Source: Mytilus edulis (taxonomy: Eukaryota). Taken from it: 64,000 nt of DNA. Position 1 is the stretch's first letter. Every line of letters starts with the position of its first letter. Below the pieces are notes generated by a model that was given only the letters and a program-made list of their open reading frames with translations, searched no databases and had not been told where the DNA came from. Made by a program: the position numbers and the translations under genes. The stretch covers positions 60,140,001-60,204,000 of the forward strand of contig NC_092346.1 of NCBI RefSeq assembly GCF_963676685.1, in the 5' to 3' direction. Below are positions 1,116-64,000 of this stretch, piece by piece.

Positions 1116-4100
1116 TGCTGTTATGAGTCCATTTGATGTTTAATGGTTTTGTGTGAATAGAAATCCTATTTATATGATACTTAAAATCAATAAACTTGTA
1201 CAAATACAATTTTAATACAATCAGACTGGCTATAACAGACCATAACAACAACTTAAATCGTAAAACTTAATCGTTAAAAGTAAAATCACAAAAATACTGA
1301 ACTCAAAGGAATATTCAAAAAGGAAAGACCTTAACAAAATGGCAAAACCAAAAGCTCAACTGTCCTATTACTGACTTTGTAAATTTCAAATACAAGTTTG
1401 ATCAAAATCAGGAGTAAACTTTTGTTTTATTACGTCCGTTGATACATGACCTTTTTTCATATTTTAAAGATTTTGTTGAAAGGGGGTATACTTTCTCAGT
1501 GATATTTTATGGGCTGAATTAGTTACGTCTCATGTGTGTTTTGATTTATGTAATCGTTGATGGGTTTCCATCATGTATGTTCTGGTTCATCTTTTAGGTA
1601 TAATCGTATCGTTACAGGTTTTCGTTACTAAATTAATTAACTGATTATTTCAGAAAACTAAGGCTTGTGGTTTCTGAGACAAAATAAGATCCATCCATCC
1701 ATCCACACATCAAATAGTTCAGGCTTTAACTATGAGTAAAATGTTCTTTGAAATATATATAAGAATAATCAAAATATATCCATTAAATGGTAATATAACC
1801 AATTTTATTTGCTAATTAAGAAGCGGAATAAAATAATTTAAGACAGCAGGGAAGATTAACTTTGTAGTTTTATAGCTTTAACTAATAAAAAGAATGAGAA
1901 CTTTATGTTGTAAATTTTACGATGTCTCTGATGTGACCTTGGGGTCAGATTTGTATAACATTGCTATTTGATTTATTGTCTAAATTGTATATCACTTTTT
2001 CACGTGTAGAAAACGATGTGAGTGGATTCCTTACTTCTTATCGGTCAATGATCTTGCGGGGTCAACACAAGTTTACGTGCCATGTGTGCACTTCCTTTTA
2101 TCATTAACTTTCGCCTTGATAACTTGTGATTCTAAAACATTGCGTGAAATTTAAATTTCCCACCCGCAAACCTCCCTTTATTTATCTTTACAAGTAGTTT
2201 TGTTAATAGATTTTTTTTTTTTAGTTGGGCAGATTTTTCTCCCCATCTTTGCTATTATTTGTCATTTATTCAATTGATATGATTTTAGTTGATGTAATTT
2301 CGTATAAATTATGTATTATAATTGCATATTAATTATGAACTTTTATGTCAATTGTTTTATTTGCAAATTGTATTTTTTTGCATTTTATGATTTTGAATAA
2401 ATGACCTTTTTTCGTCAATCTTGTTTTTATAGATATAGCAAAACAAGCTCAAACTCTGGCTGACATGTTTATATGTCAATAAGTTTATGGTATCTTTAAT
2501 AGATTTTTTTGTCAAAAGTACAATTAGCAAATGCAAAAAACTCTTTTTTACGTGCTCACTTCGAACAATTAAAGGGGGAAATCGTTCCATGCATATAACT
2601 AAAGCTTCTACTGTATGTGCGATGTCTTGTGTGACTCTGTCAATAGACATCAGATTAGTTATCTAATTTGATCACAGGGCAATAGAATAGATGCAGCATT
2701 GGTATCATGATATTTATACTCTACTTGAGCATATCATATCACAACCTATTATGACAGTCGTCTCTGCTCAAACTTTATGTGAGTGTATTATGCAGTTAGA
2801 ATACACACATGTCACATTGATAATCACAAACGTTTGTTAAAACTCACCAACAACTTGGCAGAATTCGGCCTTTTATATTGTTATTTCCAAAGTTATGCAT
2901 ATGGTATGCAAGTAACCTCAATATATGTCTGTACAACAGACTGGCCATTTAATTGCTAAAATTATTACATTACTGGCAGATCGATTACTACGGCAACCGT
3001 ACTGTCAAATATATACATATATATAAATGTCTATCAAACTCGTGGTAACTGAAGACAGATTAAATACAAATCGGATCGTCGGCTACACAACGAACTCTGC
3101 AAATTCGAGACTAAGTAAATTTAGTCTTTGAGGTTGATGTTACTATTGCTAACGTGATGATCAATGTTGAAGAACTTCTTTCGAAAGTTAGCGAATTCCT
3201 TCTACATCCTAAAAAAACTTGCACTGGTAGAAAGTGGTGTTGAAGTCTACAACTGAATAACATATTGGGCTTGCTTGAGTCCCGAATACTTTTGTCTTTT
3301 ATTTCCTTTCGATGAAATATAATCGAGATGTTTTTCTTTCACTTTTATTAGTGCTATGATTAAAACGGCGATGAGACAGCACCCGAGCAAAACAAAAAAA
3401 ATGAAACAGACCATTTGTGCATATATATTTTTTTTTAAGTTGATATATGCTACATGTATTAAACAACGGCAGGCATCAAAAGCTTACGGTCTTTCCAGCA
3501 ATTTGATCAAATCAAAGAAGTAGAAGTTTCAGTGTAGACTTTGATATTCTTGAAAATTTTGACAGTCCGTACACAACAATGTCCAAAAAAAAAGATTGAT
3601 TAGATTAACCTTTTTTATCACTGTTCTCTTTTTAAAGCGTACAAAGTTTTAAAAAAAATGAAAGATTCATTTTTTTTTTTACAAGTAGAAATTTCGTTTT
3701 TTCTTTTGAATTGATGGACATAAAGGATAAATCAAATCTTGATACAAAATTAATACTTAAATAAAATCTAAAGGAACAGGGCGTTCATTACTGTTGATCA
3801 TATCGTTGAGCTTTCAACATTGGGGAACACATCTTACCTTTACTGTATCCAACACAATATCTTGCAATGGTTTTTAGCGAAATTTATTGACTTGATATGC
3901 ATGGACGAAAACAGGTGCTGGATAATATTTTCAAATTCTGATTTATATTTGGCACTGAAGTAAACATATAAATTAAATGAAATAATGTCAAAAATTACCA
4001 ACCAATCTCCCTGTAAAGACACATTGAATTGGTAAACTTGACATGAGTTATTTTCCCATACTACATTCAATACCTGTTCAACAAAAAAGTAGGATCCATG

Positions 4101-47283: not shown

Positions 47284-48501
47284 CTAATTAGTAAGCAGAA
47301 GATATATGAGTAATGTTGTAATAATGACTGCGACTAATAAAACCCAAAACAGAATCATGTCAACTCTTGCAATTATATCTGGCCATGTTAATTCTATAAT
47401 GTCGGTGTTTTCCGTCTTAATGACTTCACCATTCATTATAGCACTATCGTTTTGAGTATTGTTGTCAGAACATCCAACAGTCTTTTTACTTCGCATGTAT
47501 TTGATAAACGATAGAGTAAAGACAACTTGCAGCCATTTTGGCACAGGCTTTGATCGGAAGTGTAATCGGAGTTCCACAGCTGTTACTATAACAACGATAG
47601 TACCCATTCCAAGTTGAAACATTAAATAAAATTCCAAAATAGAGCCGGCGGTTTTAGGGAGTGTTGAACTGACAATTGACAGGAATACGGCAAACGACAG
47701 AAAAACTGTAATAGAGTAACTCATCTTCTCACCACAGTCTACTGGTAGTGCAAATGTAAATATGTTTAAAATAGCCAATAACACAATAGGTGCGATAACA
47801 TTTATCAAATAAAATGTAGGGATTCTGCGTACAGTTAGGGAAAACTTGACTCTTGTTTCTGCAGATGAATCTACGGTGGCTGAAGTCGACACAACTTTCC
47901 ATTCCCCATTACCTTTGAAATTGTAAAAATTAATTCCTTTCAATCCCTTTGAAATTTTTATCTGGGAAATACTGTATGACCACACAACAAAAATAATATC
48001 ACACGTTTGCTCATCGAATGGAAATTTTTCAATGTTAATATCACACTTTGTTTCGAATATTTCAAAGGGTGACCATCTCAACATACCATCTTTTTCAATG
48101 ATCACTTTAATAAAACCGTTTCCAAGTTCGTCTAGCTTTTTGAATCCGTTTTGAAGAGAAATATCTGGTTTCCAAATTTTATCTTGTGATACATAGATTG
48201 TTGACAAATTTCCATATGTAGCAGGTGTCCACTGTAGATATTCGTCTTTCCAATATATGTCGACAAATCCAGTTGTTATCAACTTTTGTTTAACCTCGTC
48301 GATACCATTTACAGCTACAAGAAAAAGGTCTAAATCCACTCGTAAGGGTTCTGACTGGTTTAAACTTGGACGCACTTCTTTGTTATAACCGTCCGTTATG
48401 AACAATTTTTTCATCAAAGCTTTCATATTGTCACCAGTTTGTGCTTGGGAACAAGCGTTTAAAAACCAAATTGAAATTATGGATAGTATAATTATTGCCA
48501 T
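47284..48501 (-). CDS. Atypical nAChR-like Cys-loop subunit, paralog 4 (intronless, 405 aa)
   Basis: Signal peptide, IWKPDI, Cys-loop CDINIEKFPFDEQTC, GEKMSYSITVFLSFAVFL, four TM segments. Confidence 0.96.
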   Translation of the reverse strand: MAIIILSIISIWFLNACSQAQTGDNMKALMKKLFITDGYNKEVRPSLNQSEPLRVDLDLFLVAVNGIDEVKQKLITTGFVDIYWKDEYLQWTPATYGNLSTIYVSQDKIWKPDISLQNGFKKLDELGNGFIKVIIEKDGMLRWSPFEIFETKCDINIEKFPFDEQTCDIIFVVWSYSISQIKISKGLKGINFYNFKGNGEWKVVSTSATVDSSAETRVKFSLTVRRIPTFYLINVIAPIVLLAILNIFTFALPVDCGEKMSYSITVFLSFAVFLSIVSSTLPKTAGSILEFYLMFQLGMGTIVVIVTAVELRLHFRSKPVPKWLQVVFTLSFIKYMRSKKTVGCSDNNTQNDSAIMNGEVIKTENTDIIELTWPDIIARVDMILFWVLLVAVIITTLLIYLLLTN

Positions 48502-56145: not shown

Positions 56146-57671
56146 GGTCTATATGAACTCAAAGAATGTGTTAAAGGACCTACTTAATGATACAAGTAAT
56201 ACTACTTTTGGTGGCCAAGGTCAAATATTTATCTGTTATCTTAATCATATACAAATTTATAAAGTTGCTTGTATAGTTGATAACATGTAGATAATAATTT
56301 GATAACATGTAGATAAAATTTTTATACAATTTATAGGAAACAGAGGTGTTATTGTCTCTTGTTGCTGGCATAAGTCACTGTGACTATAAAAAAAATAGTA
56401 TGATTTAAAAAGTATAAAATAAACAATTTACAGGGCATGGGCTCGATAATATGCAACTTCGTTTCGTGTGTATTTTAGTCTAGACGCAATATCATGAATT
56501 TACTATTGAGTTGTGGGCCTCCGAAAACCTCCGATGGTCATATAAATGATAAAAACATAAACAAGGCTCCGTGTTGAAGACCGTACCTTGACCTTTAATG
56601 GTTTACTTTTATAAATTATGATTTGGATGCAGATTTGTCTCATTGGCACTCATACCACATCTTCCTATATCTTTAAAGAGAATTGGACTCGTGCAATTTG
56701 ATTTTTCTAGTTCTGTTTAACTTCATAATATAGATTAAAACTACATGTTAATCAGCGTTTTACCTCCATAACAATGATGTTTTGTCGATCGAATCAGCCA
56801 ATCAAATGATTTACCTTTGTTTCACTTTCAATGTTGACATACTTTACCTTAAAATAACTCAACACGCACAATGCATGCGTTATCAATCTCTAGCTAAGGA
56901 GTGAAATTGAAGTTCACATGAATACTGATCTAATGAGGTCGAATTATTCACTAGCATTTGATGTTTTTAGCTTATTTTGACAAAATTAAACCATCTTGAC
57001 AGCCGCTAAAAGCGAATTATTATTTCACTCTTTGCAAGTTTCATTAATGATTGAACAAAACAAATCATATTCTAAATTTGTAAATATTTCTCGTAGCTAG
57101 TGCCCCATTTAAATTATTTCAACTGTCATACTTTCTAGCTCACCTTGCCCAAATGAAATGAGTTAACAGAAAACAAAGAGGTATACCACATATTAAAACA
57201 TGATAAACTGATACAAACTATGATACATTAATACCATTGTATTTTTTATATAATGGTTTATGTATAATGAAATATGTAATCACTTCATGTTAACGCACGG
57301 AAAAATAAACTAAAATTGTAAGTGGTTAGACATTCATACATGTCAGATCATGTCAGGTAGAACGTACTTGGTCAGATCACATTCACAGAACATTTGTTTT
57401 GCCCTCCCCCTTTTCCGTATTCTTGGTATTTTTTTAATTTCTAGGTGTATATCTTAGATACCTGTAACACTATGTTACAATGTCTAATGAATACCAACAA
57501 TATTAATTCATGCTTTTATTCCTCAGAAATTTATAAAATGACAAATCAGACGTGCGTTGTTTGTTTGAGTGACACGGAATTGACTTTCGTCTTTTCCGAT
57601 GATGGGTCTTTATTATATTTTGAAAACTGATTATCTCCCTTATACAGAAGAAAAGAAATGAACAGCTGAGC

Positions 57672-58124
57672 AGGCCCGAGACCACAATTAATTCCTCTAT
57701 TAGTTCTTTATAATGTTTTGTCTCATTAAAAAAAATTGACCTATTCTTTTTGGCAGATCTTTTGTGTGTGTAATGTACAGTACAAGTCCAAAAATATGTC
57801 CAAGTTTCAGAAAAATTGCACATATACAACTTACAAATTTAGCCAATACACATCCATACCCCTATGGACAAGTCAAGAGATGTTCCGAAAACTGTAAATA
57901 TCACCTTTTTGCACCTGACCTAATCACTCTTTCCATATCAAAATCTGTTAAAATTAAACATCTAAAAATTTATTTCACCTCTCTTCTTTCATTTCCACCT
58001 TATAAAAGCTAAGAAATGTTTGAGAAAAGGAAAGAAAAAAATTTAAGAAGAAATACACTTTAATTAAAGGGAACTATATTCGTGAACAACGAAAAGTGGG
58101 GTCATTAATTGTGGTCTTGGGCCT
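57672..58124 (+). repeat. Left long terminal direct repeat (LTDR 1), 453 bp, with its own TIRs
   Basis: AGGCCCGAGACCACAATTAAT ... ATTAATTGTGGTCTTGGGCCT (20/21 inverted match). I found one difference from LTDRs 2-4 (T at 57946 versus A). Confidence 0.92.
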
Positions 58125-59211
58125 ATTAGACCCTTTTTCTTCAATATAATGCCCCAAAAAATGGCACGCATTAAGTTTATTCTATATCCAACTAGCATAC
58201 CAAATATCAAATCAATCCGACAAGTTTTATGGCAGTTCTGATAGTTTTAATAACACTACCCTCAGGTTGATAATTGTAGGTATTTTCTGGCTTGAAATTA
58301 TAAAAACATGAAACTACTAGGAAAAGTAAAAGTTTAATAACTTTCTTGTTAAACATGATATCTTAAAAAAGTAAAATGTCTATAGTAGCTAAATGGTTAT
58401 ATTTCTAGAATCTGAAAGAAAATTTATAAAAAAATATGTTTTTTCAATTGAAATTAATTTTTTTTTAAATTTTTTTTTTTAATTTAGCTAACATACCAAC
58501 ACTAGATATAAAAAAATCCATTTAAAATATTTAAAAAGAAAATTTACATTCAAAACTTATCTTAAAAAATTGCTTATCTTATCTGTAATAAGTAAAATAT
58601 AACATAAACACTAATTAGTCATAGTTCACAGGTACTTGGCCTATTTACCTGAGGTACCAATATTCAAGTGTAACATCAGGTCAGATTACATGTAAAGACA
58701 ATTTCAAACTTGTGTAATTTCTTTATTCCTTGAAATATTCCTCTAAAATAAACTTTTTAGTGAAGTTTTCTGTTTTGTTTATCCTTATAGATAAAAAGAA
58801 TTTAATTTTCTAACAGATTTCTGTAAAAAAAAACAGTTATTAAAAATTATCCTGAATTTTGAGAAATAAATTATCTAAAACATTAATAAAAAAAATAAAT
58901 ATGCTTCTTTGTTCAATTAATCTCTTAATAAATGATTAAGTAACCTATTTCAATAGATTTGGATAAAACAATCTTTATCTGGACCCCTAATAGTACATTA
59001 ATTGGCTTAGTTGGATACTGCTAAGAAAACTCTGTTAATTCAAAGTTGCCTCTGAAGGTGGTCTCTTGAAATCCATGTCACAGACTGCATCAAAAGAAAA
59101 CATGTACATCAAAGCAGATATCATACAGTGCTTGATTATAAATATAAGGATGTCCAAAGTTTATGCTATCAGTCCAAGTTGTGATATTACGGATCCAGTT
59201 AAATTTTTAAA

Positions 59212-61215
59212 ATGTTCACTAAAGGTTATACCCCATATAGCAAAGGCAAGAAGAGGTCAAAGAAAGACAACTCTCCAAGAAATCCTGGATGGTTCCCTGT
59301 AGGCACAAGTGGTAGAAGCAGGAGCCGGACGCCAATACAGATCCCTGATTCAGCTAGTGCAAGTACTTCCTACGTGCGGCAAACTTTACAATCTCCTGAC
59401 TGTGAAAAGGCTACTGGTCACATCTGTACTCTTCGACCGCAAGCGAATGCTAACCTGAAAATAGAAGAAAACAACGCATTACATTCTGGTATGAGATTGA
59501 TAGACAGTGAACTGACAACCAGCTTGATCAACACTACTTATGATAAACATAAAGTGGAGTCACCATCCTGTCCTAGGATGAATGTGGACTATCATGAACA
59601 GAAAAAGTGGGGAACTTGCTGGCAGTATACCCTGAAATGCAAAACCTGTGGTTTTATTGGAGACAGAATGAAGATGTATAAAGAAATAGCTAATGGCAAA
59701 CCAGGACCCAACCCAGGACAACCAAATGTAGCCCTTGCATCTGCTTTGCAGGATTGCCCAATTGGTAATACCACGGTGCAGCAACTACTTGCAGGAGTTG
59801 ACACACCACCACCATGCCGAAGCAGTATGCAACGCACATCTAACAGAGTAGCAGCTGAAATGGTCAATCTCAACAAAACAGACATGGCACAGAAACTTGA
59901 ACTAGTAAAAGAAGAGAACAGAAAGAGAGGTGTACCAGAAAATGAAATCAACATAACTGTGGATGCTAGATACAACAGCAATACAATTGTTAGTAAAAAG
60001 AAGCCGGGTCAGAATGCCACTCAAGCATTCGCACTTGGTATTGAAACAATGACAGACAGAAAGTTTATTGTAGCTGCAGTTGTGCAGAACAAGATGTGCT
60101 GGAGAGGGGCTTGGCTTAGAGGGAAAGGCTTTCCAATAGAATGTCCTGGTCATGAAGAATGTACTTCAAATTTATACAGAGCTGCTGCCCTGTCAGAGTA
60201 TGAGCTGGGAAAAGAGATGGGGAACCAGCTAGGACTACAGAAATTTCTTGTACGGTATGTGACCACAGATGGAGATGGACGTTCAGCTAGAGGTATTGAA
60301 GATGCTATTAAAGCTCTGGAACCAATGTGGGAGGTAGAAAGACTAGCAGATCCAGTACATTTGGGGCAGTCTCAATTCAGGGCCTCTAATCGTGCTCAAT
60401 ACAGTGCGGGAATGTTCCATGGTAAAACAAAAGAAGAAAATAGACAACTAAAGACAGTGTTTAGCAAAGATATTAAGTGCAGATGCTCCATGATAATTAA
60501 TAAACTGATGGAAAAGTACGACAAAAACATTCACGATATGAGTAAAGACTTACCAAAAGTTCTAGATGCAACTCTTCGCTGCTATGATGGTGACTGCACC
60601 CTGTGTCAGGAACATTCCATTGTCTGCAAAGGTGATGCTGCACTTAACTGGTGGAGTCGTTCCCATTACTTGTCCACATACCAAATCACTGCCCTGCAAA
60701 TGGATAAAACAGACAAATTTTTACTACAAGAAATCCTGAAAATGAAACTAACAAAAGCAGCTGTTAAAAGTATGAAACTGTATGATAATACAAATAAAAA
60801 TGAAGGAGTTCACAGAGCAATGAGTGTAAATTTGCCAAAAAATGTAATTTACTCCAAAAATATGGAAGGACGACTTGCCTCAGGAGTGCATCGAAATAAC
60901 AATATGCCAGGAACTTCAACCCAACTGAAATGTAAGAATTTAGGAGTAGACCTTTCAACTAGAAGTCAACTTTACCTGAAGAAAATGGACACCAACTTCA
61001 AATACAGTCAGGATTATGAACTGAGACCAGCAGTTCAAGAAAGGAGATTACAGCAGAGTGCAGAAAAGTTAGCCGAGCACAAAACATGGAGGGAAATGAA
61101 TAAAAAGCACGATTATTACTGCAAAGACCAATTAGATCCACAACCTGCCTTACATTTCCAGGACCATGACAGCTACTGTAAACCGAAGCTCAATCCAAGA
61201 CCTGCTGCTGACTGA
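59212..61215 (+). CDS. Kolobok-type ('Mutator-like' domain) DDD/E transposase, 667 aa
   Basis: Uninterrupted ORF with a CxxC zinc motif (CKTCG) and candidate catalytic residues D251 (ITVDARYNS), D353 (TTDGD) and E531 (TNKNEGVH), plus a DxxH motif (D380-H383). Confidence 0.88.
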   Translation: MFTKGYTPYSKGKKRSKKDNSPRNPGWFPVGTSGRSRSRTPIQIPDSASASTSYVRQTLQSPDCEKATGHICTLRPQANANLKIEENNALHSGMRLIDSELTTSLINTTYDKHKVESPSCPRMNVDYHEQKKWGTCWQYTLKCKTCGFIGDRMKMYKEIANGKPGPNPGQPNVALASALQDCPIGNTTVQQLLAGVDTPPPCRSSMQRTSNRVAAEMVNLNKTDMAQKLELVKEENRKRGVPENEINITVDARYNSNTIVSKKKPGQNATQAFALGIETMTDRKFIVAAVVQNKMCWRGAWLRGKGFPIECPGHEECTSNLYRAAALSEYELGKEMGNQLGLQKFLVRYVTTDGDGRSARGIEDAIKALEPMWEVERLADPVHLGQSQFRASNRAQYSAGMFHGKTKEENRQLKTVFSKDIKCRCSMIINKLMEKYDKNIHDMSKDLPKVLDATLRCYDGDCTLCQEHSIVCKGDAALNWWSRSHYLSTYQITALQMDKTDKFLLQEILKMKLTKAAVKSMKLYDNTNKNEGVHRAMSVNLPKNVIYSKNMEGRLASGVHRNNNMPGTSTQLKCKNLGVDLSTRSQLYLKKMDTNFKYSQDYELRPAVQERRLQQSAEKLAEHKTWREMNKKHDYYCKDQLDPQPALHFQDHDSYCKPKLNPRPAAD

Positions 61216-61348
61216 GATACCAGCTGATCCACCTAAAGACCAACAGCAAACAGAATCATAAAAGGTCCTTTTAAGGGCCACACAAATATTAAAAAAAGAA
61301 TCTGAATTTGTTGTACATCAGTCTTGAAATTTCTTTTCTTTTTCTCCC

Positions 61349-61813
61349 TCATTTCAATTTTTTTGCCAGCCCTTCCCTTGGATAGTTATAAAAATAAATG
61401 TACCCAATTAATATTTTACCCAAATTATTATTATCCATTTTCAACTCCACTCTACAGGGAGGGAGGGGTTCTGGGTGGCCCAAGCAGGAACAGGTTGAAA
61501 CGCATGACTGTCGGCTGTTGTTGAAGCCATGAGGTTCCAACGACAGATGCCCGACAGTAATACATTTAGAATTGTGGCACAGGTGCGAAACATCATAAGA
61601 TTTATCAATAAAAATATTCTGATGATGCACCATGTAGGCAAGCCTGTGCACATGCATTTGTCTCCACCCTCTGGCATCTGGAAATTTACAATTTATAACC
61701 CCATATTTGCCATTAGGTGTACATAAACCTGTCCAAATTTGACACTGCCCATTATAGCCAGGTGCAGAGCTATCATTCAGTTTTTGTCTATATTTTTGTA
61801 AAAATGCATCCAT
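61349..61813 (-). CDS. His-Me finger (His-Cys box homing-endonuclease-like) nuclease, 154 aa
   Basis: CQIWTG...YG...VHRLAY...DVSHLCHNSKC...HL...NNSR..C...C.GH....PC. This is the I-PpoI-like zinc-binding/His-Me pattern, with candidate catalytic H77 and metal-binding N98. Confidence 0.88.
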   Translation of the reverse strand: MDAFLQKYRQKLNDSSAPGYNGQCQIWTGLCTPNGKYGVINCKFPDARGWRQMHVHRLAYMVHHQNIFIDKSYDVSHLCHNSKCITVGHLSLEPHGFNNSRQSCVSTCSCLGHPEPLPPCRVELKMDNNNLGKILIGYIYFYNYPREGLAKKLK

Positions 61814-62089
61814 TTTGAAGATATTGTTTTAGAAAGACATAAGAGTAGTAATATATTCTAAAAATAAAAAGGGGTCCAACAGAATTGACAGAAAGGGCTG
61901 AAACAGGGGTCAAAGGTTTTTCAGTGCATCAAAATGGCCAAAAATACCCCCAAAGTGCCCATTATCCCAGAATCATGATATATATAAGTTAAAAATACAA
62001 TAATCAACTAGTATTTATCATTTGAAGTGACTTTCTGCCAATAAAGTTGGTCAATTCTTTATTTTCAAGATTTTGGGAATCAGCCTCTT

Positions 62090-63464
62090 AGGCCCGAGAC
62101 CACAATTAATTCCTCTATTAGTTCTTTATAATGTTTTGTCTCATTAAAAAAAATTGACCTATTCTTTTTGGCAGATCTTTTGTGTGTGTAATGTACAGTA
62201 CAAGTCCAAAAATATGTCCAAGTTTCAGAAAAATTGCACATATACAACTTACAAATTTAGCCAATACACATCCATACCCCTATGGACAAGTCAAGAGATG
62301 TTCCGAAAACTGTAAATATCACCTTTTTGCACCTGACCTAATCACTCTTTCCATATCAAAATCAGTTAAAATTAAACATCTAAAAATTTATTTCACCTCT
62401 CTTCTTTCATTTCCACCTTATAAAAGCTAAGAAATGTTTGAGAAAAGGAAAGAAAAAAATTTAAGAAGAAATACACTTTAATTAAAGGGAACTATATTCG
62501 TGAACAACGAAAAGTGGGGTCATTAATTGTGGTCTTGGGCCTATTATCTTAGGCCCGAGACCACAATTAATTCCTCTATTAGTTCTTTATAATGTTTTGT
62601 CTCATTAAAAAAAATTGACCTATTCTTTTTGGCAGATCTTTTGTGTGTGTAATGTACAGTACAAGTCCAAAAATATGTCCAAGTTTCAGAAAAATTGCAC
62701 ATATACAACTTACAAATTTAGCCAATACACATCCATACCCCTATGGACAAGTCAAGAGATGTTCCGAAAACTGTAAATATCACCTTTTTGCACCTGACCT
62801 AATCACTCTTTCCATATCAAAATCAGTTAAAATTAAACATCTAAAAATTTATTTCACCTCTCTTCTTTCATTTCCACCTTATAAAAGCTAAGAAATGTTT
62901 GAGAAAAGGAAAGAAAAAAATTTAAGAAGAAATACACTTTAATTAAAGGGAACTATATTCGTGAACAACGAAAAGTGGGGTCATTAATTGTGGTCTTGGG
63001 CCTATTATCTTAGGCCCGAGACCACAATTAATTCCTCTATTAGTTCTTTATAATGTTTTGTCTCATTAAAAAAAATTGACCTATTCTTTTTGGCAGATCT
63101 TTTGTGTGTGTAATGTACAGTACAAGTCCAAAAATATGTCCAAGTTTCAGAAAAATTGCACATATACAACTTACAAATTTAGCCAATACACATCCATACC
63201 CCTATGGACAAGTCAAGAGATGTTCCGAAAACTGTAAATATCACCTTTTTGCACCTGACCTAATCACTCTTTCCATATCAAAATCAGTTAAAATTAAACA
63301 TCTAAAAATTTATTTCACCTCTCTTCTTTCATTTCCACCTTATAAAAGCTAAGAAATGTTTGAGAAAAGGAAAGAAAAAAATTTAAGAAGAAATACACTT
63401 TAATTAAAGGGAACTATATTCGTGAACAACGAAAAGTGGGGTCATTAATTGTGGTCTTGGGCCT
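62090..63464 (+). repeat. Tandem array of three LTDRs (62090-62542, 62551-63003, 63012-63464; period 461 bp)
   Basis: Apparently identical 453-bp units separated by the 8-bp spacer ATTATCTT. Confidence 0.93.
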
Positions 63465-64000
63465 ATTAGACCCTTTTTCTTCAATATAATGCCCCAAAAA
63501 ATGGCACGCATTAAGTTTATTCTATATCCAACTAGCATACCAAATATCAAATCAATCCGACAAGTTTTATGGCAGTTCTGATAGTTTTAATAACACTACC
63601 CTCAGGTTGATAATTGTAGGTATTTTCTGGCTTGAAATTATAAAAACATGAAACTACTAGGAAAAGTAAAAGTTTAATAACTTTCTTGTTAAACATGATA
63701 TCTTAAAAAAGTAAAATGTCTATAGTAGCTAAATGGTTATATTTCTAGAATCTGAAAGAAAATTTATAAAAAAATATGTTTTTTCAATTGAAATTAATTT
63801 TTTTTTAAATTTTTTTTTTTAATTTAGCTAACATACCAACACTAGATATAAAAAAATCCATTTAAAATATTTAAAAAGAAAATTTACATTCAAAACTTAT
63901 CTTAAAAAATTGCTTATCTTATCTGTAATAAGTAAAATATAACATAAACACTAATTAGTCATAGTTCACAGGTACTTGGCCTATTTACCTGAGGTACCAA
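63012..64000 (+). mobile_element. Start of a second, tandem copy of the KolobokP-type element (runs off the window)
   Basis: 63465-64000 matches 58125-58660 (offset 5340 bp), with no difference seen. Confidence 0.88.

What the first reader, a model, noticed from the sequence alone, without database searches (positions are those of the whole stretch)
57672..62542. Intact composite DNA transposon: TIR-bearing direct repeats around a transposase and a homing-endonuclease-like nuclease
Seen: two 453-bp direct repeats, each a self-contained TIR unit, flank an open 667-aa DDD/E transposase and a convergent 154-aa His-Me finger nuclease with stop codons 133 bp apart. I found one mismatch between the repeats. 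Established: this matches the KolobokP lineage of Kolobok transposons (LTDRs of about 450 bp, bivalve-rich, His-Me nuclease related to group I intron homing endonucleases), so the class is known. To my knowledge the role of the nuclease is not resolved. Inference: this copy is very young and possibly active, making it a good substrate for testing the two-enzyme system.
Basis: partly seen in the sequence, partly recalled or inferred. Interest (0 to 1): 0.8.

Follow-up and report, generated by a model that had tools for sequence, protein, structure and literature searches.

The report
Mussel KolobokP transposon array, not monomer
This is a very young, intact copy of KolobokP, a two-enzyme mussel DNA transposon described in 2022; it sits inside a larger tandem array, and its transposase gene unexpectedly ends in a histone-type RNA stem-loop.

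Summary
There are two about 450-bp direct repeats (LTDRs) with one mismatch, each with its own TIRs. They flank an open 667-aa DDE transposase and a convergent 154-aa I-PpoI-like nuclease, with stops 133 bp apart. The KolobokP assignment (Kojima & Bao 2022) is supported on every feature I could test.

The interval is not a stand-alone element. Two more LTDRs follow at once, then a second internal region (INT). The real unit is a 10.67-kb array, LTDR-INT-(LTDR)3-INT-(LTDR)2, which runs past the window end and is bounded by one 4-bp duplication (AGCA).

The family has at least 135 identical nuclease genes in this genome. Nearly all lie in tandem arrays on unplaced contigs. There are also hundreds of dispersed LTDRs with 4-bp duplications.

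New details:
- Tandem LTDRs are separated only by the two terminal pentamers of INT.
- A full-length histone 3' stem-loop (Rfam RF00032) lies 44 nt after the transposase stop. More distant KolobokP-type loci carry HDV-like or hammerhead ribozymes at the same place.
- RNA libraries hold a spliced, possibly circular, RNA antisense to the transposase.

Known class; moderate interest.

The parts
57669..57672 (.). Left copy of the 4-bp target-site duplication AGCA. The right copy lies beyond the window at C3:60208343-60208346.
57673..58123 (+). LTDR 1 (451 bp) with 20-nt TIRs GGCCCGAGACCACAATTAAT / ATTAATTGTGGTCTTGGGCC. It carries a private T at repeat position 275.
58124..62090 (+). Internal region INT 1 (3967 bp). 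It begins with TATTA and ends with TCTTA.
59212..61215 (+). DDE transposase gene, 667 aa with no intron. Invariant residues are D251, D353/D355, the D380xxH383 motif, a CCHC cluster (C457-C472) and E531.
61259..61304 (+). Histone-type 3' stem-loop (AAAA GGUCCU UUUA AGGGCC ACACA) followed by a purine-rich stretch, 44 nt after the transposase stop
   Evidence: Rfam RF00032, full length, 34.1 bits (gathering score 34), E 5e-7. Conserved in relatives.
61349..61813 (-). His-Cys box (I-PpoI-like) His-Me finger nuclease gene, 154 aa. H77 and N98 are catalytic. The two predicted zinc sites are C24/C79/C84/H89 and C104/C110/H113/C120.
62091..62541 (+). LTDR 2
62542..62551 (+).
62552..63002 (+). LTDR 3
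63003..63012 (+). Second identical 10-bp spacer
63013..63463 (+). LTDR 4
63464..64000 (+). Start of INT 2, identical to INT 1. It continues to C3:60207430 and is followed by LTDR 5, a spacer, LTDR 6 and the right TSD.
60554..60692 (-). Antisense non-coding exon A, bounded by an AG acceptor and a GTAAGT donor on the minus strand
59232..59454 (-). Antisense non-coding exon B. The 1099-nt GT..AG intron (60553-59455) removes the antisense of the transposase catalytic core.

Best explanation
The interval is one intact LTDR-INT-LTDR unit of a KolobokP DNA transposon (Kolobok superfamily) in a Mytilus-type mussel genome. It lies inside a single insertion that has grown in place to LTDR-INT-(LTDR)3-INT-(LTDR)2.

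Shown:
- the anatomy, the TSDs, the intact genes and the conserved catalytic residues;
- the near-identity of copies;
- the heavy tandem amplification of the family.

Inferred mechanism:
1. The DDE transposase recognises the 20-nt TIRs. It moves whole elements, multimers or single LTDRs and makes 4-bp duplications.
2. Copy number inside an insertion changes by recombination between LTDRs. This is probably stimulated by double-strand breaks made by the I-PpoI-like nuclease (the Kojima-Bao model, untested).
3. The LTDR-LTDR junctions arose from one loss of INT between two LTDRs that left only its terminal pentamers. Unequal exchange then copied that junction.
4. The transposase mRNA probably ends at the histone-type stem-loop rather than at a poly(A) site. 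This would tie expression to S phase and stop transcription before it runs into the convergent nuclease gene.

The confidence given applies to the identity and anatomy. Steps 2-4 of the mechanism are less certain.
For: Pfam: PF20700 at 2.6e-65 and PF05551 at 5e-11.

Nuclease:
- I-PpoI is the only sequence hit among solved structures. The alignment gives H77=H98, N98=N119 and C79/C84/H89=C100/C105/H110.
- The AF2 model built on 29 homologs has pLDDT 87. Its four best PDB fold matches are all I-PpoI, followed by I-HmuI.
- Invariant residues are listed.

Transposase:
- D251, D353/D355, H383 and E531 are invariant in 23 homologs.
- Homologs with a source name come from molluscs, the annelid Owenia and the nemertean Tubulanus.

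Structure and copies:
- TSDs are AGCA for the array and AACT for the chromosome-2 monomer.
- Six solo LTDRs have perfect 4-bp TSDs.
- At least 38 INT copies are 99-100% identical, and at least 135 nuclease genes are identical at the protein level. Nearly all are in arrays with a period of 4416-4419 bp.
- Both ORFs are open in all 30 copies fetched.
- A non-autonomous relative with the same LTDR forms arrays of 40 or more units with a 1747-bp period.

Match to the published class: LTDR about 450 bp, RR/YY termini, TSD 3-5 bp, multimers and INT-INT junctions. The TIR core is shared with the published KolobokP-1_PeMa and KolobokP-1_MiYe.

Stem-loop.
Against: - No experiment or read-level evidence here shows transposition, nuclease cleavage or the mRNA 3' end.
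- RNA-library contigs do not cover the transposase core or the stem-loop.
- The array structure rests on the assembly alone. The short-read contigs that were laid could not span an LTDR.
- The exact termini were not found among the 2022 consensus sequences, so family-level identity with a published family is open.
- The histone stem-loop is found only in this family and its close relatives. It could be a captured relic, like another histone stem-loop fragment in a retroelement of this genome.
Confidence: 0.9

Rival explanations
1. One reading: this is a plain LTDR-INT-LTDR monomer. The extra LTDRs and the second INT are assembly artefacts of a collapsed or mis-joined repeat.
For: Tandem repeats of near-identical 4.4-kb units are hard to assemble. 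Most copies of the family sit on small unplaced contigs. I could not lay reads across the junctions.
Against: - The array has one matching TSD at its two outer ends.
- Multimers are a published hallmark of KolobokP.
- LTDR-LTDR junctions of a second type occur on four other contigs.
- The spacer is an exact, non-random sequence that occurs three times.
Confidence: 0.05
2. The family now spreads mainly as a recombining macro-satellite. Ordinary unequal crossing-over between LTDRs builds the arrays with no help from the nuclease, and transposition is rare or finished. The open reading frames survive only because the copies are young.
For: - Only three of at least 135 identical nuclease genes are on assembled chromosomes.
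- Array contigs show higher-order periodicity.
- A coding-free relative forms arrays of 40 or more units.
- There is no full-length sense transposase RNA in two RNA libraries.
Against: - Near-identical copies lie at different chromosomal sites with different 4-bp TSDs.
- All catalytic residues of both enzymes are intact.
- KolobokP families have kept the nuclease across seven phyla, which argues that it has a function.
Confidence: 0.25
3. Multimers and tandem LTDRs arise from circular intermediates: LTDR circles, or LTDR+INT 'translocatable units' with abutted TIRs. These re-enter a resident LTDR, as with IS26 units, IS30/IS21 dimers or IS3 circles. On this view they do not arise from nuclease-induced unequal crossover.
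For: - LTDR-LTDR junctions consist only of nucleotides that flank an internal LTDR. One type has the right flank plus the left flank (TATTA+TCTTA). The other has the left flank alone (TCTTA).
- INT-INT junctions lack the LTDR plus five bases.
- Kojima & Bao noted IS3/IS256-like footprints.
Against: - Each junction type may stem from a single event that recombination later copied.
- The TCTTA type can also be explained by a 4-bp GCCT microhomology deletion.
- No circle was observed.
Confidence: 0.2
4. The histone-type stem-loop is a non-functional relic captured from a host histone gene. The transposase mRNA is made and ended in some other way.
For: - The score is only at Rfam's threshold (34.1 against 34).
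- The motif is absent from families with 55% identity or less.
- Another repeat in this genome carries a histone stem-loop fragment.
Against: - It lies on the sense strand, 44 nt after the stop, with the A-rich 5' flank, the UUUA loop, the ACACA 3' flank and a purine-rich stretch 16-25 nt downstream.
- It is identical in an 86% relative, although the UTR between stop and loop has indels.
- An older copy has U-A where this one has U.G, so the pair is kept.
- The same gap in other families holds self-cleaving ribozymes.
Confidence: 0.45

Closest known systems
KolobokP lineage of Kolobok DNA transposons (Kojima & Bao, Mob DNA 2022, PMC9587614)
   Same: - LTDRs of about 450 bp with their own TIRs of about 20 nt and GG..CC termini.
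- A 4-bp TSD.
[quoted passage not shown]
- Solo LTDRs, (LTDR-INT)n multimers and INT-INT junctions with a small deletion.
- A bivalve host.
- Size (4869 bp) close to KolobokP-6_MyEd (4898), KolobokP-4_MyGa (4876) and KolobokP-1_MyCo (4848).
   Different: - The exact termini were not found among the published consensus sequences.
- Tandem LTDR-LTDR blocks do not appear in the paper's text or in the supplements held.
- The paper does not mention the histone stem-loop or ribozymes behind the transposase gene.
I-PpoI and other His-Cys box homing endonucleases of group I introns
   Same: The catalytic His and Asn, both zinc sites and the fold are shared.
   Different: - It is not encoded in an intron.
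- Sequence identity is about 15-18% in the structural alignment.
- The target site is unknown.
- The roughly 30-aa C-terminal tail is not conserved.
Bacterial composite transposons and IS tandem dimers or circles (IS26, IS30, IS21, IS3/IS256). This comparison is from general knowledge and from the discussion in PMC9587614.
   Same: - Direct terminal repeats are each mobile on their own.
- Abutted inverted ends are separated by a few flanking bases.
   Different: - The transposase is encoded in the middle, not in the repeats.
- The host is a eukaryote.
- No circle or reactive junction has been shown.
Replication-dependent histone mRNA 3' ends (stem-loop, SLBP, U7 snRNP)
   Same: It is a full-length match to Rfam RF00032: a six-pair stem, a four-base U-rich loop, conserved flanks and a purine-rich downstream stretch.
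   Different: It sits behind a transposase gene, not a histone gene. Processing has not been shown.

Membership tests
KolobokP (Kolobok superfamily) | Long terminal direct repeats of about 450 or 660 bp flanking an internal region | tested here: met
   451-bp LTDRs, identical but for one base
KolobokP (Kolobok superfamily) | Each LTDR has its own short TIRs, with termini 5'-RR...YY-3' | tested here: met
   20-nt TIRs matching at 19 of 20 positions, with termini GG...CC fixed by two independent TSDs. The TIR core ACCACAATTAAT also occurs in published KolobokP LTDRs.
KolobokP (Kolobok superfamily) | TSD of 3-5 bp | tested here: met
   AGCA, AACT, TTCT, AGAT, AACC, TACA and AAAT at separate insertions
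KolobokP (Kolobok superfamily) | DDD/E transposase with a C/DxxH motif and a CCHC zinc finger before the last catalytic residue | tested here: met
   Pfam PF20700 at 2.6e-65. D251, D353/D355, D380xxH383, C457/C462/C465/C472 and E531 are invariant or nearly invariant.
KolobokP (Kolobok superfamily) | Downstream His-Me finger nuclease on the complementary strand | tested here: met
   154-aa ORF, convergent with the transposase, PF05551 at 5e-11
KolobokP (Kolobok superfamily) | Transposase falls inside the KolobokP clade in a phylogeny with other Kolobok lineages | not tested
   The published reference sequences could not be brought into the tools. Indirect support: the N-terminus and several blocks are collinear with KolobokP-1_MaMa as printed in the supplement. 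Homologs that carry a source name come from taxa where KolobokP is reported.
His-Cys box homing endonucleases (I-PpoI group) | beta-beta-alpha-metal motif with a catalytic His and a metal-binding Asn | tested here: met
   H77 and N98 align with H98 and N119 of I-PpoI and are invariant in 29 homologs
His-Cys box homing endonucleases (I-PpoI group) | Eight conserved Cys/His residues forming two zinc sites | tested here: met
   C24, C79, C84 and H89 are invariant. C104, C110, H113 and C120 are conserved at 90% or more.
His-Cys box homing endonucleases (I-PpoI group) | I-PpoI-like fold | tested here: met
   The model has pLDDT 87. The top four PDB matches are I-PpoI (Foldseek probability 1.00, E 1e-3, TM 0.41-0.44). 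The match is modest in TM-score.
His-Cys box homing endonucleases (I-PpoI group) | Sequence-specific cleavage of a semi-palindromic site | not testable with these tools
   There is only a lead: the LTDR/INT boundary GGGCCTATTAGACCC has arms complementary at 6 of 7 positions.
Histone 3' UTR stem-loop (Rfam RF00032) | Covariance-model score at or above the curated threshold over the full model | tested here: met
   34.1 bits against 34 in the window, and 39.6 bits in an older copy on chromosome 7
Histone 3' UTR stem-loop (Rfam RF00032) | Directs SLBP/U7-dependent cleavage of the mRNA | not testable with these tools
   RNA contigs did not cover 61060-61481.

The most novel reading that the evidence does not exclude
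KolobokP elements in general carry an RNA-cleavage module in the short gap between their convergent transposase and nuclease genes, on the transposase sense strand. The module is a histone stem-loop in this mussel family, an HDV-like ribozyme in at least four other families and a type III hammerhead in at least three to five loci. It would give the transposase message a poly(A)-independent 3' end and keep the two genes from transcribing into each other. In this family it would restrict the transposase to S phase, when sister chromatids are available for the proposed nuclease-induced unequal exchange. Separately, the LTDR-LTDR junctions may be fossils of abutted-end (IS-dimer or circle-like) intermediates in a eukaryotic DDE transposon.
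Probability: 0.3. Interest if true: 0.7.

Novelty: new member of a known kind. Interest (0 to 1): 0.42.

Why it matters
The class has been published, so the element itself is not a surprise. Three things make it useful.

- It is an unusually clean substrate for the still untested two-enzyme model. There are more than 135 identical gene copies, both ORFs are intact, insertions are bounded by TSDs, and every published junction type plus a new one occurs within a single family.
- The LTDR-LTDR junctions, made only of the bases that flank an LTDR, give a concrete sequence to look for when testing circle or dimer intermediates.
- If the histone stem-loop and the ribozymes at the same position in other families are functional, this would be a DNA transposon lineage that ends its transposase mRNA by cleavage modules rather than by polyadenylation. 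Here that would also link it to the cell cycle. I found no report of this in the library searched.

Tried and rejected
- **Single-sequence AF2 model of the nuclease:** pLDDT was 39.7, so it was unusable. I replaced it with a model built on an alignment.
- **Match to a published consensus:** searches of the 2022 supplement for the termini gave no exact match to either end; only the TIR core was found. Peptide searches failed because the alignments are gapped.
- **Empty-site allele:** the left flank is unique in the assembly.
- **Cross-family comparison within this genome:** Only two 351-bp pieces could still be fetched.
- **The look-up of encoding contigs:** I used metagenome contigs instead.
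- **82-aa ORF inside the LTDR:** no Pfam match, so I treated it as spurious.
- **Antisense exons:** they have stops in all frames, so I rejected the idea that they extend the nuclease protein.
- **LTDR-LTDR blocks as nested solo-LTDR insertions:** rejected for the window's junction, because the bases on the two sides of the middle LTDR differ (TCTTA vs TATTA). For the TCTTA-type junction an insertion with a 5-bp TSD cannot be excluded.
- **Loose-end sequences from read laying:** I did not search with them, because they are not stretches of the window or of a stored locus.
- **Hammerhead_3 at whole-locus scale:** not reported. It appeared only in a targeted 101-nt scan.

Full report
**1. The observation**

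The window holds a direct repeat starting at 57672 and 62090.

Between the repeats lie an uninterrupted 667-aa ORF (59212-61215, +) and a 154-aa ORF (61349-61813, -). The ORFs are convergent, with 133 bp between the stops.

- The same repeat occurs twice more, at 62551 and 63012.
- The three right-hand copies are separated by 8 bases, ATTATCTT.
- After the fourth copy the internal sequence starts again and is identical for all 536 bases compared (63465-64000), to the end of the window.

**2. True extent**

The window is G000:C3:60140001-60204000. The sequence beyond it (L001) shows a second complete internal region, two more repeats with the same spacer, and then unrelated DNA.

The left flank reads CTG-AGCA-GGCCC and the right flank reads GGGCC-AGCA-ACAG. 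A monomer of the same family on chromosome 2 (L003) is flanked by AACT on both sides. The termini are therefore GGCCC...GGGCC, the LTDR is 451 bp and the TSD is 4 bp.

The insertion is a 10,670-bp array, LTDR-INT-(LTDR)3-INT-(LTDR)2, with one TSD. In these terms INT begins with TATTA and ends with TCTTA, and the spacer between tandem LTDRs is exactly TATTA+TCTTA.

**3. The two proteins**

*Transposase.*
- Pfam gives PF20700 (Mutator-like transposase) at 2.6e-65 over 2-354 of 357 model positions.
- In an alignment of 23 homologs down to 25% identity, the invariant residues include D251, D353/D355, H383 (with D380, a DxxH motif), C457/C465/C472 and E531. Two further Cys/His clusters are also invariant.
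- The homologs with a source name come from Mytilus, Haliotis, Pinctada, Mizuhopecten, Lottia, Ostrea, Owenia and Tubulanus. The best named hit is 87% identical to a Mytilus edulis protein. These are groups in which KolobokP was reported.

*Nuclease.*
- Pfam gives PF05551 at 5e-11.
- The only solved relatives by sequence are I-PpoI entries. The alignment gives S76-H77 = S97-H98, C79/C84/H89 = C100/C105/H110, E93 = E114, N98 = N119 and C104 = C125.
- Across 29 homologs these residues, and C24, are invariant. C104, C110, H113 and C120 are conserved at 90% or more. The last 30 or so residues are not conserved.
- A model built on that alignment (pLDDT 87) has I-PpoI as its four best PDB matches, then I-HmuI. 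This agrees with the HHpred result in the 2022 paper.

**4. Family picture in this genome**

- The INT query found at least 38 copies at 99-100% identity.
- The nuclease query found at least 135 copies identical at the protein level. Nearly all are spaced 4416-4419 bp apart on about 35 small unplaced contigs, with some 3962-bp spacings where two INTs abut.
- Only three identical copies are on assembled chromosomes: two in this array and one on chromosome 2. Older copies on chromosomes 8 and 7 are 97% and 93% identical.
- Thirty fetched INT copies fall into six variants with 18 variable sites in all, and every one keeps both ORFs open.
- INT-INT junctions read CCTCTTA|GACCC. This means the LTDR plus five bases is missing, as published for other families.
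- The T at LTDR position 275 is private to the leftmost LTDR.
- Exact LTDR ends joined to non-INT sequence number 385 (right ends) and 358 (left ends). They include six solo LTDRs with perfect 4-bp TSDs that I paired by eye. They also include a non-autonomous relative that ends in the same CCTCTTA and forms arrays of 40 or more units with a 1747-bp period.

**5. Tandem LTDRs**

- The TATTATCTTA junction occurs only at this locus, three times.
- A second junction type, GGGCC-TCTTA-GGCCC, occurs six times on four other contigs, including another triple.
- Both types keep the LTDRs whole and retain only bases that normally flank an internal LTDR.
[quoted passage not shown] They do not list LTDR-LTDR.
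- The simplest reading is one loss of INT per junction type, with both breaks within five bases of the LTDR ends, followed by unequal exchange.
- Breaks at those positions point to an activity aimed at LTDR ends: the transposase or the nuclease. They are also what the re-entry of an LTDR circle with abutted ends would leave. The TCTTA type can also be produced by a GCCT microhomology deletion. This part is inference.

**6. RNA and DNA in public runs**

The INT is held almost word for word (0.93-0.96 of sampled 31-mers) in runs under eight coded organism labels and in marine metagenomes. All runs were available only as contigs.

In two RNA libraries from different studies:
- Contigs lie on 58852-59452, 60552-61059 and 61482-61711.
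- Coverage of the transposase core (59568-60533) is next to nothing.
- Both libraries, but neither DNA run, show a joint that skips 59455-60553.

On the minus strand that skipped stretch begins with G|GTAAGT and ends with TTTTCAG|G, so it is a canonical intron antisense to the transposase.

In one library a 393-nt contig at depth 101 closes on itself: 141 + 222 nt plus the 30-nt k-mer overlap. An AG acceptor lies before 60692 and a GT donor after 59232 on the minus strand. This is either a 363-nt circular RNA or splicing from one array unit to the next. The exons have stops in all frames.

Kolobok-derived lncRNAs with a tandem-like structure have been reported in Mytilus eggs (PMC12750733). 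The contigs cannot show strand or RNA ends directly, and several come from relatives only 95-99% identical. Full-length sense transposase mRNA was not seen, but a hole in contig coverage proves nothing.

**7. A histone-type stem-loop behind the transposase gene**

- An Rfam scan of 57000-64000 gave one hit: RF00032, the histone 3' UTR stem-loop, at 61259-61304 on the + strand. It covers the full model at 34.1 bits (curated threshold 34), with E 5e-7.
- The sequence is UAAAA-GGUCCU-UUUA-AGGGCC-ACACA, and all six pairs are standard. It is followed 16-25 nt later by AAAGAAUCUG.
- It starts 44 nt after the transposase stop and ends 44 nt before the nuclease stop codon on the other strand.
- The same stem-loop is identical in a metagenome contig whose transposase is 86% identical, although the UTR between the stop and the loop has indels (L033).
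- It scores 39.6 bits in the older chromosome-7 copy, where the third pair is U-A instead of U.G. It scores 30.7 bits, with one broken pair, in the chromosome-8 copy.
- The 2022 paper does not mention it. Paper searches found no transposase gene with such a signal.
- Another repeat in this genome carries a histone stem-loop fragment (s1-841879), so a captured relic is a real alternative.

**8. The same gap in more distant families**

A metagenome scan gave 39 loci with transposases 31-100% identical. In several of them a convergent nuclease gene is present.

*HDV-like ribozymes.* Four loci carry, 100-220 nt after the transposase coding region and on its sense strand, an HDV-like ribozyme with the core CCUCCnCGUGG ... 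GCUAA. Helices P1, P2 and P4 pair fully in each locus with different sequences:
- P1: GGCGAUC/GAUCGCU, GGUUGCA/UGCGACC, GACUACC/GGUGGUC, GACUAUC/GAUAGUU.
- P2: AGGGUAU/AUACCCU, AAGGAGA/UCUCCUU, GAGGG/CCCUC, GAGGG/CUCUC.

The Rfam RF02682 scores are 30.7 and 34.2 bits, below its threshold of 44.

*Type III hammerheads.* Four loci (L049, L050, L051, L053), and probably L036, carry a type III hammerhead. It has an intact CUGAUGAG...CGAAAC core, a GUC (AUC in L049) cleavage triplet, and stems I and III that covary between loci. RF00008 matches over its full length at 29.8 bits, E 4e-5, in a targeted scan, below its threshold of 48.5.

In L036, L038, L039 and L051 the module lies between the transposase stop and the 3' end of the nuclease gene. 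About nine loci showed no module that I could recognise. I did not test cleavage.

Three unrelated RNA-cleavage devices at one position suggest a shared need. That need could be to end the transposase transcript without poly(A), or to stop it from running into the convergent gene. This raises the odds that the stem-loop here is functional, but it remains inference.

**9. Comparison with what is known, and verdict**

Every defining feature of KolobokP that could be tested is met. Clade membership by phylogeny was not tested, because the reference sequences could not be brought into the tools. The family's dimensions (4869 bp, LTDR 451, TSD 4, TIR 20) are close to the published Mytilus families KolobokP-6_MyEd, KolobokP-4_MyGa and KolobokP-1_MyCo. 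The exact termini were not found among the published consensus sequences.

The role of the nuclease remains a model awaiting experiment. Earlier agents of this scan described another KolobokP family, amplified as LTDR-(INT)>=10-LTDR, in this same genome and called the host a mussel (s1-836981).

The element is a new, very young member of a known kind. What this check adds:
- the corrected extent of the insertion;
- the LTDR-LTDR junction type;
- the antisense spliced RNA;
- the stem-loop and ribozyme modules.

**10. Limits**

- Only one read-laying run was available, and it returned contigs, not reads.
- Loose-end sequences from that call were not searched further.

Noticed in passing
L035:3902-3974, L038:2684-2789, L039:2327-2404, L069:2136-2218 (metagenome contigs): HDV-like self-cleaving ribozyme folds lie on the sense strand 100-220 nt after KolobokP-type transposase coding regions. 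P1, P2 and P4 covary. Rfam RF02682 scores are 30.7-34.2 bits, below threshold.
   Followed up: partly
L049:3113-3174, L050:2308-2373, L051:4681-4741, L053:3689-3749, L036 near 3022: Type III hammerhead ribozymes with an intact core lie after the transposase stop, and in L036 and L051 before the convergent nuclease gene. Stems I and III covary. RF00008 scores 29.8 bits in a targeted scan.
   Followed up: partly
L043 about 2610-2660 and L045 about 3290-3340: Two further KolobokP-type loci share an unassigned motif, CCGTC...GACGGAAGCCGAG...CTCGGAG, in the same gap. It may be another structured RNA.
   Followed up: no
G000:C5:6482183-6553394 and C3:14812467-14829966: A non-autonomous relative has the same LTDR ends and an INT that also ends in CCTCTTA. 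It forms tandem arrays with a 1747-bp period, 40 or more and 11 units long, on assembled chromosomes.
   Followed up: partly
window 58117-58131: The LTDR/INT boundary GGGCCTATTAGACCC is a 15-bp semi-palindrome with arms complementary at 6 of 7 positions. Each TIR also contains the palindrome AATTAATT. Both are candidate sites for a dimeric I-PpoI-like nuclease, and both could be chance.
   Followed up: partly
window 58100-62120 in public runs: The internal region is held almost word for word in runs under eight different coded organism labels and in marine sediment and seawater metagenomes. This could reflect a species complex, introgression, horizontal transfer or carry-over. The names were coded, so I could not tell.
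   Followed up: no
window 47284-48501 (-): An intronless 405-aa ORF encodes a Cys-loop neurotransmitter-gated ion channel subunit (PF02931 at 7e-45, PF02932 at 1.5e-15), about 9 kb upstream of the array.
   Followed up: partly
LTDR 3' subterminal region, window 58078-58090: The block ACTATATTCGTGA, about 35-45 bp from the right end, resembles ACTxCATTCGTG at the same place in published scallop LTDR consensus sequences printed in the supplement. It may be a conserved protein-binding site.
   Followed up: no
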